A DNA stretch of 54,545 nt, filler included, from Sluysia triapertura (taxonomy: Eukaryota), in the NCBI GenBank assembly GCA_046118255.1. It is 4 parts of 4 records of this genome, joined end to end, with 100 filler letters (N's around TTAATTAATTAA, not from the genome) between each part and the next. Parts side by side here need not be neighbours in the genome. Positions count along the whole stretch, not along the records: positions 11,189 to 28,505 come from JBJNIA010189496.1; 3 more parts are not named here. The stretch is one strand, 5' to 3'. Position 1 is the stretch's first letter; each line of letters opens with the position of its first letter. Made by a program: the position numbers and the translations under genes. Under the pieces are notes generated by a model, which ran no database searches, was not told where the DNA came from, and was given only the letters and a program-made list of their open reading frames with translations. Shown in pieces: positions 3,969 to 28,505 of this stretch.

Positions 3969-4724
3969 AAGTAACATGTGAAATATTTGAAAACTTTCAA
4001 GATATTCAAAGTTCTACTGATAATTACAATAGCAGTAGCAGCAGTAGTAATAGCAGGTCTATTTTGGGTATGATTGGCAGTGGCTGGTGTAATAATGGTA
4101 GTAATCAAGGTATTCGAATAGATTTACCAACTTGTTTCAATGATGTTATCACTGCTTGTGGTCGACATGGTTGTTGGAGTATTCGATTCTGGTTACTGTT
4201 ACAACTACCAACCAAACAGTTGGATATCGTATTATGGAGAACAAGCAATAATATTGAAATGCTATTGGTTAATAAAACTATGTTTGTAATTAGAACAAAA
4301 ACGACGACACTAGAAACCAATTTTGGTTATTTTGAATGTCGATTTACTGACAAAGATAATAATTTGGAAAATATTTTAAAACGTTGGCGTTATATTGAAA
4401 TATCGTGGGATGCTTCAGAAGGTCTTTTGTTATTCTTAGATCGAGCGTTTATGCCTTGCAAATACATTAAAGGTAAAGATAATAATTCCAAAAATCGTCC
4501 TAGTTGGCAATTGTCATCGTATATAGAGTTTTCTGGGAAAGATTTTCAATTCAGTGGATGTATTGATGAAGTTGAAGTATATCGAAATCGAATATCTGTA
4601 TTATATTGGACAAAACGAGTTGATGATGAACTAATTAAGAAAATGATTAAAACGTTGAATTTTCGTGAAAAACAAAAAGAATTTATGATACGTTTACGTA
4701 ATGCACGTATAGATATGTCACCAG
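3969..4724 (+). CDS. Internal exon encoding a LamG-like/pentraxin (concanavalin-A fold) domain of a multi-exon extracellular protein
   Basis: Lies within ORF 3941-4774, with acceptor tttag|3969 and donor 4724|gtaaaa (phase 1-1, 756 nt). The motifs CFNDVITACGRHGCWSIRFWL, WRYIEISWDASEGLLLFLD and FSGCIDEVEVY match the LamG_3/pentraxin pattern seen in ADGRD1-type ectodomains. Confidence 0.7.
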
Positions 4725-11811: not shown

Positions 11812-12921
11812 ACAAGCTTCAATTGATTATTCAGTTTTCCGAATTTTTGAATCAAAGACGTGTCGCAGAAATTTTTGAAGTAAATATTCAAGAGTGGTTC
11901 TTGTTGTTGTAGTACCATCATTAAGTTGCTTCAGTACTTTGTATTTTGTGCTATTCATCAAATTTGTACGTACATTTAGAATATTTTGACGATTTACTAT
12001 CTTATATTTACAAATAAAGTTAGGTTTTTATTGATTTCTCTCTTTTATATCACACATTTACTAAATCTTCATTATTTTTAACGAAGTCTCGTTTTGTCAT
12101 TTCCATGTATTTATTTTGAATTTATTCGACTTGTTAGGTTGTCATCACTACCCTCTAAAATCGTGTAACGTGCTATATATATTAAGTTTCCCCGATATAT
12201 TGAGAGGTAAAATATTTATTTCATTACAAAAAGCAATTAAAGACCCTTGCGGTTTTAATTGTAAAATTTTATTTTGTTTTATTCTTAACGTGAACCCTTT
12301 TTTGGGTCACGTTCAACGACAAACATAAGCTTTTGGACCTGTTTTTTGGATTTCATTTCATAAAGATAAATTTGACGTCATCGTTTCGGTACATTTTAGA
12401 TTCACTATAAAATATATGCAAATTCTTATTTAAATTCTTTGGAACCATTTAGAAGGATCATTGTAAAAGCATCTAAAAATTTTTCATTCGTGCGATTATC
12501 CATTATAAAATCGCTAATCGGGTAAAGTTTTAATTACGATCCTTAATTATAACAACATTGGCAGCAATAGCAATAAAATTTTTGTGTGTTATATAATTAT
12601 TTTATTATAATTAAAAGTTTTAAACCTTGAAGTAACTTTGTTGAATCGATCCCATTTAAAGTGGATCCTACGTAATTAATGTAGTTGCAAATTAGTCAAC
12701 CTGATTAGTTCTTGAGTATTAAGCCGAATTTTTCAATTCGGATTTGTAAATTACGAAGATCCTGTTTAAATGGGATTATATGTAAAATTAATTAGATTAA
12801 TCGCGTCAAAGAACATCTAAATTATAGAAGCCTTGAAAACCTTAAATAACTCCAATTCTCATCGTCAATATAACCACTAAGAAGAAATATGTTCTTTTTA
12901 ACCTCCGTATCAAAATTATCT

Positions 12922-12974
12922 AAATCCTACAGACTAGCCTTTACACATAAGACTAGGGTCGTAGGTGAACTCAC
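12922..12974 (+). other. Conserved 53-nt structured motif, copy A
   Basis: AAATCCTACAGACTAGCCTTTACACATAAGACTAGGGTCGTAGGTGAACTCAC; stems CCTAC/GTAGG and CTAG/CTAG; ACCTCC at 12901. Confidence 0.75.
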
Positions 12975-12989
12975 ATATTATAAACTATT

Positions 12990-13355
12990 TTACTTTGTTT
13001 TGCAATGTATTTTTTAATCTGTCTCTTTTAGTACGATTAAATCGTTCAATCAATAATGATGAACTGCATGTTTTTCTGATACTTATTCACTCTTTACCTA
13101 AATCAATTCGAAAATTTATATGTTTGTCGTTTTTAATTAATATCGATACCGCTTTACTCACATCTCTACCACTATTTGAAAACACAGCAGCACAATTTAA
13201 AATATTTTTGTAGCCTTTATTAATTTTTGAATATGGAATCATATCCATTAAATCAGCTTGCCATAATTCATTTGTTCCTTTGCTTTATATTTACGTGATG
13301 GAAATCTTGGCCTCATTGGTTTTCTAAGTGGTGTGCTAACTGATTTTTTAATCAT
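12990..13355 (-). mobile_element. Maverick/Polinton-type retroviral-like integrase pseudogene
   Basis: From ATG at 13355 (minus): LRKPMRPRFPSRK / KGTNELWQADLMDMIPYSKINKGYKNILNC / NFRIDLGKE / IERFNRT. These match Polinton integrase motifs LHKP.R..FP.R, WQADL, TD.GKEF and ERFNRT. Frameshifts, deletions and 3' truncation are present. Confidence 0.85.
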
Positions 13356-15886: not shown

Positions 15887-18608
15887 CAGACCATGGAATA
15901 AAATTTGTTACCAGGCAAAATTAATAATTAAAATAAATATTGTGTTAATGACTAAAATGATAATAATAAAAGATAATAATGATAATAAAGATGACTTAAT
16001 AATAATAATAAAATTAAAATTAATAATAATAAATTAATAATAATAATACAGTAATAATAACGATAATAATAATAATAAAATATATATAAAAATTTCCACA
16101 TAAACTTTTATCTTTACAACATAGATTTCTTAAATTAAATAAATAAAATTTCTTAAATGAAATTAATCTTGTAAAATAAATTTCTTTTCCTTTTAACTTT
16201 CTTTTCTTTAGTTTCATTATATGATCCTAATTAAAGTGTTAAATAATGTTTGTTGAAAAATTGTGAATTTGAAATGTTTTGAATTATTTAATGTCTTTGA
16301 AAATTTAAGGTGTAAATTGTGATTCTAATGTTGTGGAATTGTGAGTTAAGAGTGTTTTAAATGAGATTTGAAATGTAAGTATAATTTTAAAGTTACGAAT
16401 TTAAAGTGTTTTGAAATGAAAATGGTTTTAATGGATCTAAAAAAAGGATGTAAATATAAAATGTTAATAAATGAGATATTATGAATGAGGTGATTGTTTT
16501 GAATTTTTTAAGTTAAAAAGTTGGCCACCACATACATTTTACATACTTAATGAATATCCGTCTCATTTGTTTGCACAGTGATTATGCCGACTGATTTCTC
16601 AATCAATTTGTGGCCTCTTTTTTCATTTTTTTCGAAACTTTTGCTAGTGTTTCAACTTCGGTAAAACTATTTATATTCTTTAGATTGAATGATATTTTCA
16701 TTAATTCTGTCTTCTCATTGATTCTATATTACAACATGCAGATTAATAATTGGTAAATTTCATAATGTCCATAATTTATATATAGTTTGCATTCATTATG
16801 TTTCTCCAAATCTACGACTTATTAATCCACCAGCAAGTGATGCCACCATGAGAAGTAATTCAACAACAAACCTAGAATACTTAGTAAAGGTAACAAAATT
16901 CCCAATCTACATCACATATTCCTAGATCATTTAATAGAATCCATATCTCATAACTTTTAAAATAAATTTATTTATAACATTACTCAATAAACTATTTCAA
17001 TAATAATATTCCATAAAACTAATTTATTCTACAGATAATCTACAGTCTCAAACATTTTATACTAGATTAAAGCTATATCATATCATAAGTCATTAAATTC
17101 ACTACACATCCATGCGTTTTCAGACTACGAAATGACAATATTTCACAAAAGAAAATCCACACATTACGTTATTCAGTGCATTCACCAAATTCATAAACGG
17201 ATAAAAATAAGACATATAAATTTCAAATACTATGTGCAAGACTTATTAATAAAACAAACTCAACCTGCAACTCGGAAAACACTGAGTGAACATCAAATAA
17301 GTCTCTATACTTCCTGCATCTAAAAACTTTAAAACCAATTAACAAACAACATTATTCACTAAACTATTTCGTTCTTTAGCCATTTAACAATAACTTTTTA
17401 GTAAATAACACGATATATAAATAAATAATACCATTCTCACTATCAAGAATTTCAGATTTCATACAGAAATTTTGTACTTGATTGATTTTATCTTTAATTT
17501 AAATTGATATATTATTTATACAGTAAGCATTAATATAATAGTAATGTTAAATTTTGATTTTATTATGTTAATAAGTAAGGAGATTGTTCTTAACAAATCC
17601 ATTTTTTGCTGGTATTTGCTAGAGATGATAAACTTGAGGTCATAGGAAATTATCATCAAACTTCACTTATTAAAATTGGCCGGTGTAGTGTTCAACTCAT
17701 TCACAAACTATCAACAAACTCAACTACAAATATTCCATACCCAGTACAACTTTAATAAAATATAATACACTTTAAACATATATTTTCAATATACCTTATC
17801 TTAAATATAATATAATATATTCAGATTACAATAATTTATCATATAGCACTACTTCTAATCCGCTGATATCGCCTCTCCCAACTGCATCAACATTATGTTA
17901 ATTATCACACTCTTTTTTATTACAATTGTGTTTCATTTCCACTTATTCAAGAGCTTAAGACTACCTTCATAGAAACCAATGCTTAACCAAGATGAATAAG
18001 AAAGCGTTTTCAGATGTCTTTGAATATTTCTTTACTTTGTACAATATAGAAAAATGTGAAAAATGGAAAAGTGAAAATAATAAGCTTAATGTGGTGCAAG
18101 CTTGTGAACACATAGCAAGTTTAAGATTGCGTATGGCAAATTTGATTGTAGGAAACGGCGGAAAATTGTCAAGAGAGATGAAGAGCAAAAATTGCTTTTA
18201 TAGAAGAAGCATATGAATATGCTAAAATGAATTCAAATAGACGACACATTATTATTTATAACTTTATTTAAAATTGCGCATTTAATTATGTAATTTGTGA
18301 AATGCAAGTGATTAAAATATAATTGTAGTAATTTCAATTTTTTCTTAATTATGGAACCTTGTTTAAATAATCAAGATTAGAGATAAATTAATTTTCATAA
18401 TTTTAGTTTAAAAATTATAAATAAGGAGTCGATTATTTTCAAAATTGAATATGTTAATAAGAATTATTTACTGAAATTTAATGTGAACTTAAAGGAACAC
18501 TGCATTATTCTATCGTTTGATCTATATAAAATAATATTATATTCCAAGATCGTAATTTAAATAAAGTATTATTTAAAAATTGCCAAGAATTTGTACTCTA
18601 TTTATTTT

Positions 18609-18929
18609 ATGAGTTTATATTACGCAGTAACTAAAGGTAAGAAACCCGGAATTTATTCTTTCTGGGAAGAATACGAAGCAACAATCGAAAATTTTGATGG
18701 TGTTTATTTTCGAAAATTTTTTACGAAGCCCGATGCTATATTATTTTTGATGGAAAACAATCTTGTATCATCAAAATTTTATTATGCAATTGCAGCTGGT
18801 CATGTTACTGGAATTTATTTAAATCTGGATGATTGCAAGGAACAAATAAATCAATATTCTGGAGCATTTTTTAAAAAGTTTAAAACAGTTGATGAAGCAA
18901 AACATTTTATTGATAATTACAAAAAGTAA
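18609..18929 (+). CDS. Two tandem RNase H1 N-terminal hybrid-binding (Cauli_VI) domains; no catalytic domain seen
   Basis: MSLYYAVTKGKKPGIYSFWEEYEATIENFDGVYFRKFFTKPDAILFL and FYYAIAAGHVTGIYLNLDDCKEQINQYSGAFFKKFKTVDEAKHFI both fit YAV..G..PGIY..W..C...V..Y.GA.YKKF.T..EA..F. A possible donor gtaagt overlaps the stop codon. Confidence 0.85.
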   Translation: MSLYYAVTKGKKPGIYSFWEEYEATIENFDGVYFRKFFTKPDAILFLMENNLVSSKFYYAIAAGHVTGIYLNLDDCKEQINQYSGAFFKKFKTVDEAKHFIDNYKK

Positions 18930-19439: not shown

Positions 19440-22290
19440 TATTATAAAGTCTTTGATATTTGTAAAATATTTGAGAAATAAAATAATTGTTGCAAATATT
19501 AAAAATAAATTTATTATGATAGGAATTAGAAAAAAAGTAGAAAAGGAATCAGATTGGTGAAGATGAAAGCGTCTAGAATCTCCTGAGTACTTTATAAAGC
19601 ATTAAACAGTTTCAGAACCTCATTAAAACCTTTAAACATAAAAATAAGATTGTCTTAAAATAGATTAATTAATTAAAATCCTAATTAACTTAATTAAGAA
19701 AAGTACGTTTTTGTAAATATCGTTTGAATGCGGAATATTATGTTAAATTTGAAACGGTGTATATATTTTTTGAAAAGACCGAGTTCATGTAAGGAAAGCC
19801 TTGAGCAAAGTCAAATTTAAATTAATTGTTAATTATGGAATGTTGAATTTTTAATACTTAGAATGATAAAAATATAAGATGATAGTTTTGAAAGAAGATA
19901 ATCTGGAATTGAGCTTGAAATGTCTAAAGAGTGGTTTGTCTGAGGATAAGAACCGTAAGCATTTTTCATTAGAAAATCTCGTGTGAAAAACCGAAAATCA
20001 TTTAAATTCATTATTTTTATGTATGATAACAATACTTGTGATTGTTATTTTAGTGTGAGAAGTGTTGAGGTAAAGACCTCAGGTCCCATTTAGAATAATG
20101 ATAGTATAATTTATAGCTCACTGGTCAGAGAATGCGAATGCACTTGGAGTAACTTTTCTTTGATGTCGAATTTTTGGGGGTACTTTGTTGCTCTACTATG
20201 TGCCTGGTGTTGTGGGTTCCTCCATGCTCATGTGGAGTTGCCCTCCGGGTCAGAATGGATGGATGGTACCTGAAACTATACCATTTTAAGGGAAAATGAT
20301 GCGAGTTGCTTCTCATTTGTACTAGGTACCAGATTCATTTTGTGCCTAGTCCTTATGAAGCAATGATAAATGTAACTATAATCTTCGATGATACTGATGG
20401 AAACGAAGAAGATGGTGGAAAAGAAAAAGAAAAAGATAAAATCACAGTCGATGAACCATAAGATGAAGACGAAGAAGATAATGACCAAGCTGATGATGAA
20501 GATCCGAACCAAGAAAAACATGATAATGATGATAAAGATTCTGAAGATGATGCAGATGCTGTTCCTCGTGATCTCGAAGAAGATGTTGTCCTTGTTGCAT
20601 ATGGAGATTAAGAAACTAATGATGATACATATTGAAGCTAATACCGATCCTGAAACTGAAAGAACATGCCGGTGGAGACGATGATGAAAATATAGATGCA
20701 GTTGGTGAAGGAAATGGCGGCGCAGATAACGATTCTGATGAAGAATATGATGATACCCATCCTGCTGTAGAAACCTCACCCGATGGGAAAAACATATTTG
20801 TGATATTGGAAATGCAGCTGTTTGTGAAGATGCTGATGGAGATGAATTAAAATGTGATAATGATCAAGAAGGCAATGCTGAAGAATGTTATAATAAAGAT
20901 GAAGATTCAATTCATGAAGAACATAAGATTGACGAAGACTATGAATAGAAGATAATGATTCCGATGATGAAGGTAATAATAACCATCATGCTGCTGAAAC
21001 CTCAACCCGGTGAGAACAACTTATTGGTGATGTAGCTACTCATGAAAAGAAGATGTTTCTCCTGATGAAGACGATGGTGATAATGACAACGATTATTCAG
21101 ATGTAGAAGAAGACTCCAAAGAAAAAGATGATGATGATAATACGGATGATGATACAGATTATGATACGGATGATGATACGGATGAGGACACAAATTCTGC
21201 TGCTGAAACTTAATCGCGAAGAGAAAAACGTGTTACAAATCATATTTGTCGCTGCTCGTGGTTATCAGAGAGTAGTTGTTTCTGTTCCAGTTATTCTTGA
21301 TTGGAAAGAATGTTTGTCATACCAATGCTGTATTTTTGGAACATTCGAGAGTTCCGTGACCAAACTGCTGCCGTTGTACAAGTTGTACATTTCTTAATAT
21401 CTGTTGCGATCCTACATTTATTTGTGAAATGTTTGAACTTTAATTGTCTGCATGCTGTTTATCATTTATGTAAACCAATCATTTTTATTGTTATTTTTAT
21501 TTCTTTGTTGTCGTTTTTCCTTTGTAATGAATGTAAGAGATTATCCTTTCATCCCATTCTCTAAGAGGTTGTCCTGCCACTCAAAACATATATCCTCTCG
21601 CCAGTTCTAAATTACGCATAGGAAGAAGTCCTGATTGAGTCTCACTTTTCATCCTTTCGCAAAACTAACCTTTCCTTTTTACTTCCTTATGCGAACCCTA
21701 CTACAAAAATTCTTATCTCTTTAAAAGATCAATCCTATGATATGTCCCCCGTTGTCCCACTATCTACATTAGGGCAGTTTCACGATCATTTTGGTAATTG
21801 AAAATTGGTAATTGGACAAGACGGATATTAAAACTGTCAATTTTTATTAAGTTTCAAATTAAATAAATTTTAATTAAATTAATTGACAAATGTGCTTCAA
21901 TACTTTACAAATAAAACCTCGTATTTTTCATTTTTGTGTTTTGATTCAAATATTTTATACGCTTATTTTGTTATTAAAATTCATCATAATACTTAACTTA
22001 ATTCCTCGATGTTTATTTTAATCTATTACCTTAATCCCAACAAATTCGTACTTACTCATGCTTTTTAGCAAAATTCTTCATTCTCTCGTCATTTCATAAA
22101 AGCTTTTTTCTTTAATTAAATTAATTAAGATTTTAATTAATTAATTTATATTTAGTATTTACTTATTTTGGTTTTAAAGTTTTTATAATGGTACCAAAAA
22201 TTACAACTCTTCATTTTTATAACTTATTTGCAGTAATTATTATTTTTTAAATTGATCTTCAAATTTTACTATTGCTTTTATTTAAAAATT
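19440..22290. mobile_element. Foldback-like segment with long diverged inverted arms
   Basis: 19622-19702 (..ATTAATTAATTAAAATCCTAATTAACTTAATTAAGAAAA) is the approximate reverse complement of 22103-22190. 19455-19510 similarly mirrors 22210-22275. Confidence 0.5.
20380..21220 (+). pseudogene. Asp/Glu-rich, internally repeated coding relic
   Basis: GAT/GAA-rich frames with stops and frameshifts. Repeated unit DNDSDEEYDDTHPAVETS (20725), DNDSDDEGNNNHHAAETS (20951), DDDTDEDTNSAAET (21169). Confidence 0.6.
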
Positions 22291-23973: not shown

Positions 23974-26376
23974 TGGGGAGCCATTTTAATGTTTTTTTTA
24001 ATTTTCAGTTTTTTCTTTCAAACCATCAATTAGTAATAACAGCAAAAGAAAAAAATTGATAAAGATATTAAAGATGCTTTGATAAAAAAAGTTTTATTAT
24101 TTTTCGAAAATAAAAAAACGATATTTATTTTGACGAGTCTTTGTATTAAACCGGTTTGTATTTCTGAGTGTGTTTGTATGTTTGTTTTATTATTTGATGT
24201 GAGTGTAATAATCCGTTGTAATTGTTGAATTGTGAGCCTTATTATTGAATGAAATTCAAGACAAAATCAAATTAGGAGCCCAGTTCATTTTTCTATGAAT
24301 TACCATTTTTTTTGTATGATTGTTTTCATTTGTTTGCTTTAGTCAGTCAGACTGATGTGTGTTATGGTATTATGAGCTGATTGGTTGTTGATGTGAGTTT
24401 GTGATTGTTAAAAATTTGAATTTTAAATTGTGCATTGTGTATAATATGAAAATATAAGAGTATAGAAAATTGTAGCACACAAATTTAATTGTTAGGATGA
24501 GTGGAGGAAATATGTGGTGAATAGGGTTAATGAGAAATACCGGGTTTTATGTGTGCTATTATCATGTCAAACTGTACAGAGATTTAATTGGATAATTACA
24601 AACTCAATTGGCATGCAAAATTGAGTATATATAATTATAATCAGAAGTATAAGTTTCAATTTAAACGATTTGAATTTTATTATCAATACAAAAATAATAA
24701 TAACAATAAATTGATGACTCAATACAGAAATGAATTTTCGATCGTTTGAAATGAATGATAATAATTATATATAGATTTATTGATAATATAACAAATTGTG
24801 TCTTGTAATCATTTCAATTGAATGAGGCTCATAAATCGTATTTACTTTTTACAATGTATGTATAAAAACAATTCTCGTCTGATAACAATATTTATTGTTA
24901 GTATGTATAAATCAGTAGTAGTGTCAATAAATAAACGAAACTGTATTGGCTCACAATTTTGTGTGATATTTGAAAACTTTTAAACGAGACATTAATGAGG
25001 AGCCTTATTTAAATGATAAGGACATTTATCGCTCTTTTCCCCACAGTTTTCTTTTTGACTAGTCGTGTGTGCTTTCAATGTGTGTACACAACAGTTAATT
25101 TTACGTTCAAATTTATTTAAATTATTTTTTTTACTAAAATGTATTTCTAACTTACTGGTTTATTTTTAATTCATTTTCGAAATCGTTGTTATGAGTTAAA
25201 AATTGGATTACATTGAAACATATTTAAATTGTCAAGTAACGCTAAATATACTTATATTTGTTGCATTATTATCATGATAAAATAGTGAGATAGTAATTGG
25301 ATTTTTAACACTTAATACTTCAATATTTAGTTTATCTTTTGAGGTGCGATGAAGTGTAAAATAATCAAAAATAACTAGATTAAATAAATAAAAAGAATAA
25401 ATAGATTATTCAGGATGGATAATAGATTTGGAAAAATACCAACAATCATATGAGTCACAAGGCGTCTTGTTACGGTGATTCGTTTTATTGAGTCTTTTCG
25501 TACCTTTCTATTGAAATTCGATTTACGGCTATACATAGGGTTTAATAGTGCATACGCTTAAAGTTTTTTAAACTTAATAAAAGTATTATTGTATTTCTTT
25601 GGCTATTTCTTATTTTAAAATGTTTCTAATAATTCAATAGCATTGATTTATTAATTTATTTCAATGGATTATTAAGAAAACACTCAAGTTTTGATTTTCT
25701 TCAAAATAAAATATTGATTTTCAAAAGAAAAGGGGATAGACAGTCGCAAATCACTTCATAAACAAGCAGTGATTTTAAAATCATGCATGATAAAGTTGCA
25801 TTTATTTATTGGGTTTATTAATCGTATTCATTTATATTAATATAACTTTATTTTCAATTCACTTACTATGAAACAGCAAAAGTGATACATTAATACGATT
25901 GTATATTTTTAATAATGTTTATGTATATTATTATTATTTTGATTCGTTACTATCTTTACAACATTGATTCACGTTTCTGAGCATAATAATGTGGTATCTA
26001 CTTTATGAATTGTCTTTATAAATGTGTCCAAACTATGTCAAATTCTGCCATCTTCGTATTCATTTTAATATCAGTTATAAATGAAACTCATATTATTGTC
26101 ATCATAAAGTTTAATTTCCCGTTAATTTTATTAAACAATCGCTATTATATTACTGATTTTCTAGATAAAAGTAATGTGTATTGCGATACACTGAATTTTC
26201 ATGACAACACCATACAAATTATTATATACTGTATTTATAGTAATTATTTTTTTAAATTGATCATCGTTTTTGTTTCATTGTGAAACTGATTGTGTGCGTC
26301 TCTGTTAAGACACTCCTAATAATAATAATAATAATCATAATGTTAATAATAATAGTTTATTTGATTTCTCGAAATA

Positions 26377-28378: not shown

Positions 28379-28505
28379 TTTGTAAATGTACTTTTATTAT
28401 TTTCAAATGTACCTTAGTTTCATTTGATTATATGGTAAAGATGGAAGTACATATAATCAAATGAAACTAAGGTACATTTGAAAATAATAAAAGTACATTT
28501 ACAAA
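28379..28505. repeat. Perfect 56-bp inverted duplication at a contig end
   Basis: 28379-28434 is the exact reverse complement of 28450-28505, with a 15-nt spacer; the second arm runs into the N gap. Confidence 0.9.

What the first reader, a model, noticed from the sequence alone, without database searches (positions are those of the whole stretch)
12490..12975. Recurring module order: hairpin-GTAA array, then ACCTCC(AG) box, then the 53-nt motif
Seen before copy A: GCGATT/AATCGC..GGTAAA (12492), GATCCCA..TGGATC-CTACGTAA (12648), CCGAATT/AATTCGG-ATTTGTAAA (12724), GATCCTGT..ATGGGATT-ATATGTAAAA (12758), then ACCTCC (12901) and the motif. The same order occurs at C (array, ACCTCCA 32848) and at E (units at 40643, 40787, 40824; weaker box GCATCCAG ~40908). 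D has ACCTCCAG ~25 nt upstream. Sequence between landmarks is not alignable by eye. Inference: an old, diversified family of ~0.4-0.6-kb element arms or LTRs that sequence-based repeat masking could miss.
Basis: partly seen in the sequence, partly recalled or inferred. Interest (0 to 1): 0.75.

Follow-up and report, generated by a model that had tools for sequence, protein, structure and literature searches.

The report
Old mobile-element repeat with conserved signals
The flagged stretch is one decayed copy of a roughly 1-kb non-coding mobile-element repeat present in hundreds of copies; the hairpins, the ACCTCC box and the 53-nt motif are real, conserved signal islands of that repeat, so this is a tidy but fairly ordinary transposon finding.

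Summary

- **Copy number:** the 3' half of the 53-nt motif occurs 825 times in this 619-Mb genome, against 0 for the reversed control.
- **Box and motif:** ACCTCC followed 15-35 nt later by the motif start occurs 151 times, against 0.
- **Hairpin units:** hairpin-plus-GTAA units reach 4.75 per kb inside the element and 0.06 per kb in the rest of the piece.

- **Alignability:** within the main family the whole stretch aligns to other copies at 65-80% identity, so ordinary repeat finders would catch it.
- **Size:** full copies are about 980 bp. The window copy (about 12298-13020) has lost its 5' part and abuts an unrelated 110-bp repeat.
- **Other families:** several otherwise unalignable families share only three islands, in the same order. 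These are hairpin-GTAAA units with swapped but still complementary stems, the box, and the motif plus a short tail.

The element class is not settled. I found no ORFs, terminal inverted repeats, LTR pairs or target duplications. Copy number rises towards the 3' end, the layout is one-directional, and (TTA)n sometimes starts exactly at the 3' terminus. Together these weakly favour a non-autonomous retroposon copied from its 3' end. Solo LTR remains a live rival.

The parts
12298..13020 (+). This window's copy of the repeat. It is 5'-truncated and lacks roughly the first 320 nt of full copies. The 3' end is approximate, within about 15 nt.
   Evidence: Homology to other copies starts at 12298-12333 and ends at 12992-13015. 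Nothing upstream of 12298 matches the 5' part of the family. The family 3' tail continues about 25 nt past 13000 in other copies.
12298..12375 (+). About 1.6 copies of a roughly 48-nt internal subrepeat, which other copies carry in 2-3 copies.
   Evidence: Read from the 5'-side alignment of copies.
12441..12468 (+). Hairpin-GTAAAA unit 0, of the GGAACC..GGTTC type.
   Evidence: The family majority sequence has a perfect stem. The 27-nt word has 41 genome hits against 0 in the control, and this site is listed among them.
12493..12525 (+). Hairpin-GTAA unit 1: CGATT..AATCG stem, then GGGTAA.
   Evidence: The same unit is present in L032, L033 and L064.
12536..12589 (+). Copy-specific diverged linker. 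It produced the apparent element start at 12590 in BLAST.
   Evidence: Other copies continue through this point with a different shared sequence. Run X1 contigs replace the 54 nt with 98 other letters (table 5).
12648..12675 (+). Hairpin-GTAA unit 2: GATCC..GGATC stem with a TTTAAA-centred loop.
12724..12749 (+). Hairpin-GTAA unit 3: CCGAA..TTCGG stem.
12758..12787 (+). Hairpin-GTAAAA unit 4: GATCCT..AGGATC in the family, 2 mismatches here.
   Evidence: The 27-nt word has 107 genome hits against 0 in the control, and this site is listed with 2 mismatches.
12901..12906 (+). ACCTCC box, 15 nt before the motif start.
   Evidence: Box then motif: 151 exact hits against 0 in the control, with this site listed. 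The box is conserved across families.
12922..12974 (+). The 53-nt motif, an imperfect palindrome with a 6-bp outer arm and a 4-6-bp inner arm. It is the most conserved part of the element.
   Evidence: Twelve columns are invariant and 25 are at least 90% conserved in 39 copies. The 3' half has 825 hits. It is shared at 85-96% identity between otherwise unrelated families.
12975..13020 (+). A/T-rich 3' tail. It holds the degraded equivalent of the conserved ATTTTATTG block at about 12987-12997, followed by a subfamily-specific terminus.

Best explanation
Window 12298-13020 is a dead, 5'-truncated copy of a roughly 1-kb non-coding transposable-element family.

The element has a one-directional layout, in this order:
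1. a 5' part that is rare in the genome;
2. short tandem subrepeats;
3. about five forward-oriented hairpin-GTAAA(AT) units spread over about 450 nt;
4. the ACCTCC box;
5. the 53-nt imperfect palindrome;
6. an A/T-rich tail of 50-70 nt ending in ..ACA.

The hairpin units, the box and the motif with its ATTTTATTG block are cis-acting signals kept by selection in the active source copies. That is why they survive in several families whose other sequence has diverged beyond alignment.

I infer, but have not shown, that these are non-autonomous retroposons. On this reading their transcript is recognised through the 3' module by a reverse transcriptase supplied in trans, probably by a LINE. Copying starts at the 3' end, often stops early, and leaves many copies lacking the 5' part.

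Shown: repeat status, boundaries, copy numbers, and conservation and order of the islands. Inferred: the RNA intermediate, the enzyme, and the role of each island.
For: Repeat status:
- 825 motif copies, 151 box+motif copies, and 107 and 41 copies of two hairpin units, all with reversed controls of 0.
- 391 first-look candidates for the 851-nt query.

Discrete, non-coding element:
- Consistent 5' start with unrelated flanks in L036, L058, L060, L061, L062, L063 and L039.
- Consistent 3' tails.
- No ORF above 110 aa and no Pfam domain in or beside the copies.

Cis-signal islands:
- Between families only about 53 nt before to about 20 nt after the motif end aligns, at 85-96% identity.
- The box is conserved, with family-specific spacing of about 17-19, 25-27 or 29-31 nt.
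- Hairpin units recur in divergent families with stems that differ yet stay complementary: GATCC/GGATC, GAACC/GGTTC, GGTTCT/AGAACC, GTTTC/GAAAC.

Retroposon-type polarity:
- 27-nt word counts rise from 5' to 3' as 5, 41, 107 and 825.
- In 28 motif-selected copies, upstream family homology falls steadily: 93% reach 100 nt, 63% reach 400 nt and 25% reach 900 nt.
- All units face one way, 47 forward against 3 reverse, and none lies inverted at the 5' end.
- There are no terminal inverted repeats.
- (TTA)n begins exactly at the ..ACA terminus in at least 5 copies. In a control window 150-180 nt away such arrays are scattered.

Context only: LINE expansion and 45% unclassified repeats are reported for Diversisporales fungi (PMC11952901). 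This genome may belong to that group, but that is weakly supported.
Against: - No partner LINE carrying the module was found.
- No target-site duplication signal rose above control.
- No poly(A) was seen. The (TTA)n tail appears in under 1% of copies and could be a microsatellite born after insertion.
- The word-count gradient is not corrected for unequal conservation of the four words.
- Several apparent truncation points are alignment breaks at variable segments, not true ends.
- There is no tRNA, 7SL or 5S-like head and no Rfam match, so it is not a classical SINE.
- Covariation inside the 53-nt motif is almost absent: 2 compensatory cells in 39 copies.
- No RNA run was available.
Confidence: 0.4

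Rival explanations
1. Solo LTRs of one or more related LTR-retrotransposon lineages. On this reading the hairpin units are U3 enhancer-like repeats, and the box plus motif is a conserved promoter or R/U5 signal.
For: - Termini resemble LTR ends: 5' TGTCA.. and 3' ..CAACA or ..ACA across about 8-15 copies.
- L036 is flanked by GAGG on both sides, and L041 shows a 3-of-4 match.
- The one-directional layout, with repeated upstream units and a conserved module near the 3' end, resembles U3-R-U5.
- Repeated palindromes in LTRs are known from plant Sirevirus LTRs. This is from my own recollection and was not checked here.
Against: - None of 52 loci with about 1.5 kb of flank holds a second copy in direct order. 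No sequence is shared beyond either end, and nothing resembling a primer-binding site or polypurine tract abuts the ends.
- The 5' end is far rarer than the 3' part, 5 against 107-825. Solo LTRs should keep both ends.
- The L017/L018/L019 family ends about 20 nt after the motif without a CA end.
- Target duplications are not reproducible, seen in 1 of 4 copies.
Confidence: 0.2
2. Non-autonomous DNA-level element moved through a single-stranded or recombinase route, of Helitron, Helentron or Crypton type. On this reading the hairpins and the palindromic motif are read as DNA structures at one end.
For: - There are no terminal inverted repeats and no reproducible target duplication.
- Stems vary in sequence but stay complementary, which suggests recognition of hairpins in single strands.
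- The conserved module sits next to one terminus.
- Tyrosine-recombinase Cryptons are common in Glomeromycota genomes (PMC13465315). This is context only, since the organism is uncertain.
Against: - The termini are not 5' TC and 3' CTRR, and no hairpin lies 10-12 nt before the end. The base following the 3' terminus varies among copies (G, T, A or C), not the fixed T of an A|T Helitron insertion site; the 5' start is preceded by T in the copies read.
- The 5' end is much rarer than the 3' end.
- No coding partner was seen.
Confidence: 0.15
3. Host functional module carried passively by repeats, for example a dispersed promoter or small-RNA gene family. On this reading the motif and the downstream A/T-rich block drive or encode a transcript.
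For: - The 53-nt core is far better conserved than its surroundings.
- A TATA-like string often follows it.
- The minus strand closes one more pair of the inner arm, a G-U at positions 17/31 in 31 of 39 copies.
Against: - The TATA-like string is not conserved, with variants such as TACATAAA and CACAAAAT.
- There is no Rfam family.
- Copies decay like neutral sequence, with deletions inside the motif in L034, L039 and L068.
- No RNA data were available.
- The motif is absent from the metagenome and viral collections.
Confidence: 0.05

Closest known systems
LINE-mobilised non-autonomous retroposons with a 'stringent' shared 3' tail (SINE/LINE pairs such as the eel UnaSINE1/UnaL2; long SINE-like fungal elements such as Blumeria Eg-R1). 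Named from my own knowledge, not checked here.
   Same: Non-coding. A conserved stem-loop-like module of about 50-130 nt lies near the 3' end and is shared by otherwise different families. There is an excess of 3' parts over 5' parts, and a short-repeat tail occurs at the exact terminus in some copies.
   Different: No pol III head. At about 1 kb the element is long. There are 25-50 nt of family-specific sequence after the shared module. No partner LINE was identified. An upstream array of hairpin units is not a known feature of such tails.
Solo LTRs with repeated palindromic motifs in U3 (for example plant Sirevirus LTRs). Named from my own knowledge, not checked here.
   Same: TG..CA-like ends, a one-directional layout, repeated palindromes upstream of a conserved module, and a size of about 1 kb.
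   Different: No paired copies, no primer-binding site or polypurine tract, unequal representation of the two ends, and no reproducible 4-6-bp duplication.
Helitron/Helentron non-autonomous elements
   Same: No terminal inverted repeats, no target duplication, hairpins near one end, and families that share mainly terminal signals.
   Different: The termini do not match TC..CTRR. There are several hairpins far from the end rather than one near it. The 5' end is under-represented.

Membership tests
LTR retrotransposon (solo LTR) | 5' TG .. CA 3' termini with short inverted ends | tested here: inconclusive
   The main family starts TGTCAAT.. and ends ..TATCAACA or ..TTTTTACA. Only 7 of 12 terminal bases are mutually complementary. 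One family ends without CA.
LTR retrotransposon (solo LTR) | Fixed 4-6-bp target-site duplication | tested here: inconclusive
   GAGG flanks L036 on both sides. The other three copies with both ends do not match. The copies are old enough for duplications to have decayed.
LTR retrotransposon (solo LTR) | Two direct copies flanking an internal region with a primer-binding site and polypurine tract | tested here: not met
   No locus has two motif copies. There is no shared sequence beyond either end and nothing resembling a primer-binding site or polypurine tract at the ends. The limit is about 1.5 kb of flank and short contigs.
SINE / LINE-dependent retroposon | Internal pol III promoter head (tRNA, 7SL or 5S derived) | tested here: not met
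   ARAGORN found no tRNA. Rfam gave no match at E up to 1 in the element. No A/B boxes are visible in the 5' end sequences.
SINE / LINE-dependent retroposon | 3' tail shared with an autonomous LINE of the same genome | not testable with these tools
None of the held loci has an RT ORF next to the module.
SINE / LINE-dependent retroposon | Excess of 5'-truncated copies | tested here: inconclusive
   Word counts run 5, 41, 107 and 825 from 5' to 3', and upstream reach declines steadily. Word conservation is not equalised, and some breaks are alignment artefacts.
SINE / LINE-dependent retroposon | A-rich or simple-repeat 3' tail and variable-length target duplications | tested here: inconclusive
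   (TTA)n starts exactly at the terminus in at least 5 copies, against scattered arrays in the control. There is no duplication signal over control.
TIR DNA transposon / MITE | Terminal inverted repeats, with binding-site repeats at both ends in opposite orientation | tested here: not met
   No inverted pair joins the two ends of L036 or L058. The hairpin units are all forward, and none is inverted in the 5' part.
Helitron | 5' TC, 3' hairpin then CTRR, insertion between A and T | tested here: not met
   The termini read TGTCA.. and ..CAACA or ..ACA. The base following the 3' terminus varies among copies rather than being a fixed T.
Any curated RNA family (Rfam 15) | Covariance-model match | tested here: not met
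   The only hits in the piece are spurious miRNA-like matches to a TA-rich hairpin at 28380-28504 and a weak snoRNA hit at 21143.

The most novel reading that the evidence does not exclude
The three islands may define a so-far undescribed superfamily of non-autonomous elements. The islands are forward hairpin-GTAAAAT units whose stems swap but stay complementary, the ACCTCC box, and the 53-nt palindrome. On this reading mobilisation depends on an array of single-strand hairpins read by an enzyme not yet linked to any such signal. That could be a lineage-specific reverse transcriptase with multi-hairpin recognition, or a single-strand DNA route.
Probability: 0.12. Interest if true: 0.6.

Novelty: new member of a known kind. 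Interest (0 to 1): 0.3.

Why it matters
In genomes of this kind a large share of repeats is unclassified. PMC11952901 reports 18-45% of arbuscular mycorrhizal fungal genomes as 'unknown TE'; whether this genome belongs to that group is only weakly supported.

A short set of conserved cis-signals that links several unalignable families gives a practical way to group them. A motif-order model would do this where alignment fails. It would also help find the enzyme that moves them.

For gene annotation the main message is practical. Window 12298-13020 is repeat, not a regulatory or RNA gene candidate.

Tried and rejected
- **Rfam and ARAGORN on the piece:** nothing at the element.
- **Folding the motif:** z-scores of -0.4 on the plus strand and -1.5 on the minus strand, not significant. 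Pair counts show conservation but almost no covariation.
- **Target-duplication searches:** the two automated scans found no excess over control. The only exact flanking repeat, GAGG either side of L036, came from reading the ends of four copies by eye.
- **ORF and Pfam scans** of loci and window ORFs: nothing related to mobile elements.
- **Search for a coding partner:** the RT family search listed places but no loci could be cut.
- **Literature search for the motif letters:** 0 papers.
- **Motif scans** of metagenome contigs (two scans) and viral contigs: 0 hits.
- **Sequencing runs:** only two DNA contig sets and no RNA. Run X2 holds identical pieces at low depth, so it is the same organism and not a relative. 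No empty site was seen.
- **'Second, shorter element starting at 12590':** rejected. Other copies continue through that point, and the window copy simply has a diverged linker.
- **Inverted hairpin units at the 5' end:** none.
- **Organism identity:** not established. Two protein-atlas look-ups only hint at a fungus.

Full report
**Setting**

The piece is contig C189496 of a 619-Mb assembly in 263,945 contigs, with about 27% G+C. It has no tRNA genes, and the flagged stretch has no Rfam match. Two protein-atlas look-ups hint at a fungus. One used a LIM-domain exon in L085 and the other an RNase H1 N-terminal ORF in the window. I treat the organism as unknown.

**Observation**

- hairpin-GTAA units at 12493-12525, 12648-12675, 12724-12749 and 12758-12787;
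- the ACCTCC box at 12901-12906;
- the motif at 12922-12974.

A fifth unit of the same design lies at 12441-12468.

The pattern is far from chance.
- I defined a unit as a perfect stem of at least 5 bp with at least 2 G/C pairs, a 3-12-nt loop, and GTAA within 12 nt.
- The element body then has 3 units in 632 bp. The remaining 16.6 kb of the piece has 1.
- No run among 500 Markov simulations reached 3.

**It is a dispersed repeat**

- The 27-nt 3' half of the motif has 825 genome hits at 3 or fewer mismatches, against 0 for the reversed control.
- The box followed 15-35 nt later by the motif start has 151 exact hits, against 0.
- An 851-nt query around the finding gave 391 first-look candidates. 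The best alignments cover 600-680 nt at 69-74% identity, with E-values down to 1e-127.
- A 37-copy alignment shows even conservation (majority base about 80-90%) from 12390 to 13000.

So inside this family the sequence between the landmarks aligns perfectly well with tools.

**Boundaries**

Fuller copies run about 980 bp: L036:798-1779, and L058:1501-2437, which is damaged in its 3' part.
- **5' end.** It is consistent, starting TGTCAATATG.., with unrelated flanks in seven loci.
- **3' end.** It comes in subfamily versions ending ..TATCAACA or ..TTTTTACA, about 50-75 nt after the motif.
- **Window copy.** Homology starts at 12298-12333, and nothing upstream matches the family's 5' part.
- **Neighbour.** The copy abuts an unrelated high-copy repeat of about 110 bp at 12177-12288.
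- **The break at 12590.** It recurs in BLAST but is an artefact of a diverged linker (12536-12589) in this copy. Other copies continue through it.

**Conserved islands across families**

Many loci share with the window only about 53 nt before to about 20 nt after the motif end, at 85-96% identity. Their upstream sequence is unrelated or belongs to other families. L017, L018 and L019, for example, share up to about 940 nt among themselves.

Three islands survive in these families.
1. **Motif and tail.** The motif is followed about 10 nt later by an ATTTTATTG block.
2. **Box.** It often reads ACCTCCAGTAAG. Spacing is family-specific, at about 17-19, 25-27 or 29-31 nt.
3. **Hairpin units.** Seven of 17 divergent copies carry at least one, 176-518 nt upstream. 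That is 9 forward units against 2 on the reverse-complement control. In the main family 30 of 35 copies have at least one, with 47 forward and 3 reverse. The copies without units are mostly those whose detectable family homology reaches only 68-107 nt upstream of the motif end.

The stems of the units differ but stay complementary: GATCC/GGATC, GAACC/GGTTC, GGTTCT/AGAACC, GTTTC/GAAAC, CCGA/TCGG. The TTTAAA-centred loop and the GTAAA(AT) tail are kept. This favours recognition of a hairpin in a single strand over a fixed double-strand binding site. The point is an inference.

**What kind of element**

Negative results:
- No ORF above 110 aa and no Pfam domain in or next to the copies.
- No terminal inverted repeats.
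- No inverted units at the 5' end.
- No second copy in any locus.
- No shared sequence beyond either end.
- The automated target-duplication scans show no signal above control; the GAGG pair at L036 was seen only on reading the ends.
- No Helitron-type termini.

Positive, polarity-type evidence:
- **Word counts.** Four 27-nt words along the element, all at 3 or fewer mismatches, give 5 (5' end; control 1), 41 (unit at about -470), 107 (unit at about -150) and 825 (motif).
- **Upstream reach.** Among 28 copies picked by the motif alone, the share whose family homology reaches a given distance upstream falls steadily. It is 93% at 100 nt, 81% at 300, 63% at 400, 52% at 700 and 25% at 900.
- **3' tails.** (TTA)n begins exactly at the ..ACA terminus in at least 5 copies. 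In a control window 150-180 nt away the arrays sit at arbitrary places.

Caveats:
- The words are not equally conserved.
- The motif is shared by several families.
- The tails are rare, and they could be microsatellites born after insertion.

**Reading**

That this is transposable-element-derived repeat is, in my judgement, about 0.95 certain. For the class, I weigh the options as follows:
- non-autonomous retroposon copied from its 3' end, with the module as recognition signal: 0.4;
- solo LTR (TG..CA-like ends, one GAGG/GAGG flank): 0.2;
- hairpin-reading DNA element: 0.15;
- host promoter or RNA module: 0.05;
- the rest is unassigned.

The motif itself gives little structural evidence.
- Its arms are conserved, but only 2 of about 460 pair cells are compensatory.
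- Fold z-scores are unremarkable.
- The minus strand closes one extra G-U pair in 31 of 39 copies. That is a weak hint and nothing more.

**Limits**

I could not inspect the 150 listed RT loci (of 3352 first-look candidates) or more flanks.
- All 'own' genome searches are used.
- No RNA run was on hand.
- The two DNA runs are contig sets of the same organism and show no empty site.
- The motif is absent from the metagenome and viral collections and from the paper library.
- Dfam and Repbase were not available, so 'unclassified' means unclassified with these tools.

**Verdict**

This is a real and well-observed module order, explained by an old, diversified family of non-autonomous mobile elements. 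It is ordinary in kind. Its modest interest lies in the conserved multi-island signature.

Noticed in passing
window 12177-12288: An unrelated short interspersed repeat of about 110 bp, possibly MITE-like. It has at least 417 first-look candidates at 77-90% identity and a very high depth peak in run X1 contigs. It lies directly against the truncated 5' end of the element.
   Followed up: partly
window 13117-13318: Another high-copy stretch just downstream of the element. Depth is 1300-2270 in run X1 contigs, with many contig joints and loose ends. Its type is not determined.
   Followed up: no
window 18591-18929 (+): ORF of 112 aa with two RNase H1 N-terminal (Cauli_VI, PF01693) stretches, E 5e-29. 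It may be a host RNase H1 exon or part of a mobile element.
   Followed up: partly
window 15917-16093, 26314-26354 and 28380-28504: (ATT)n microsatellites, which are also very common in the fetched loci. A TA-rich hairpin at the piece's end gives below-threshold miRNA-like Rfam hits that look spurious.
   Followed up: no
window 16251-16533, 19463-19852, 21838-22028 and 22105-22186: These stretches match other repeats that lie in the flanks of fetched loci (L019, L023, L017) at 70-77% identity. The piece therefore holds several further repeat families.
   Followed up: no
window 20200-21200: Island richer in G+C (0.34-0.38 against about 0.26), with acidic low-complexity ORFs on the plus strand and no Pfam match. 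It may be an exon.
   Followed up: partly
G000:C85627:3517-3567 (-) and 4311-4358 (+): Two box+motif copies in inverted orientation about 750 bp apart on one contig. This is the only contig seen with two copies.
   Followed up: no
run X2 on window 12377-12623 and 12852-13057: A run labelled as a different organism holds pieces identical to the window at depth 2-4. This organism's DNA is therefore present in that other sample.
   Followed up: no
L034, L039 and L068 (motif region): Some copies carry internal deletions of the motif, apparently between short direct repeats such as CGTA..CGTAGG. That would fit microhomology-mediated decay.
   Followed up: no
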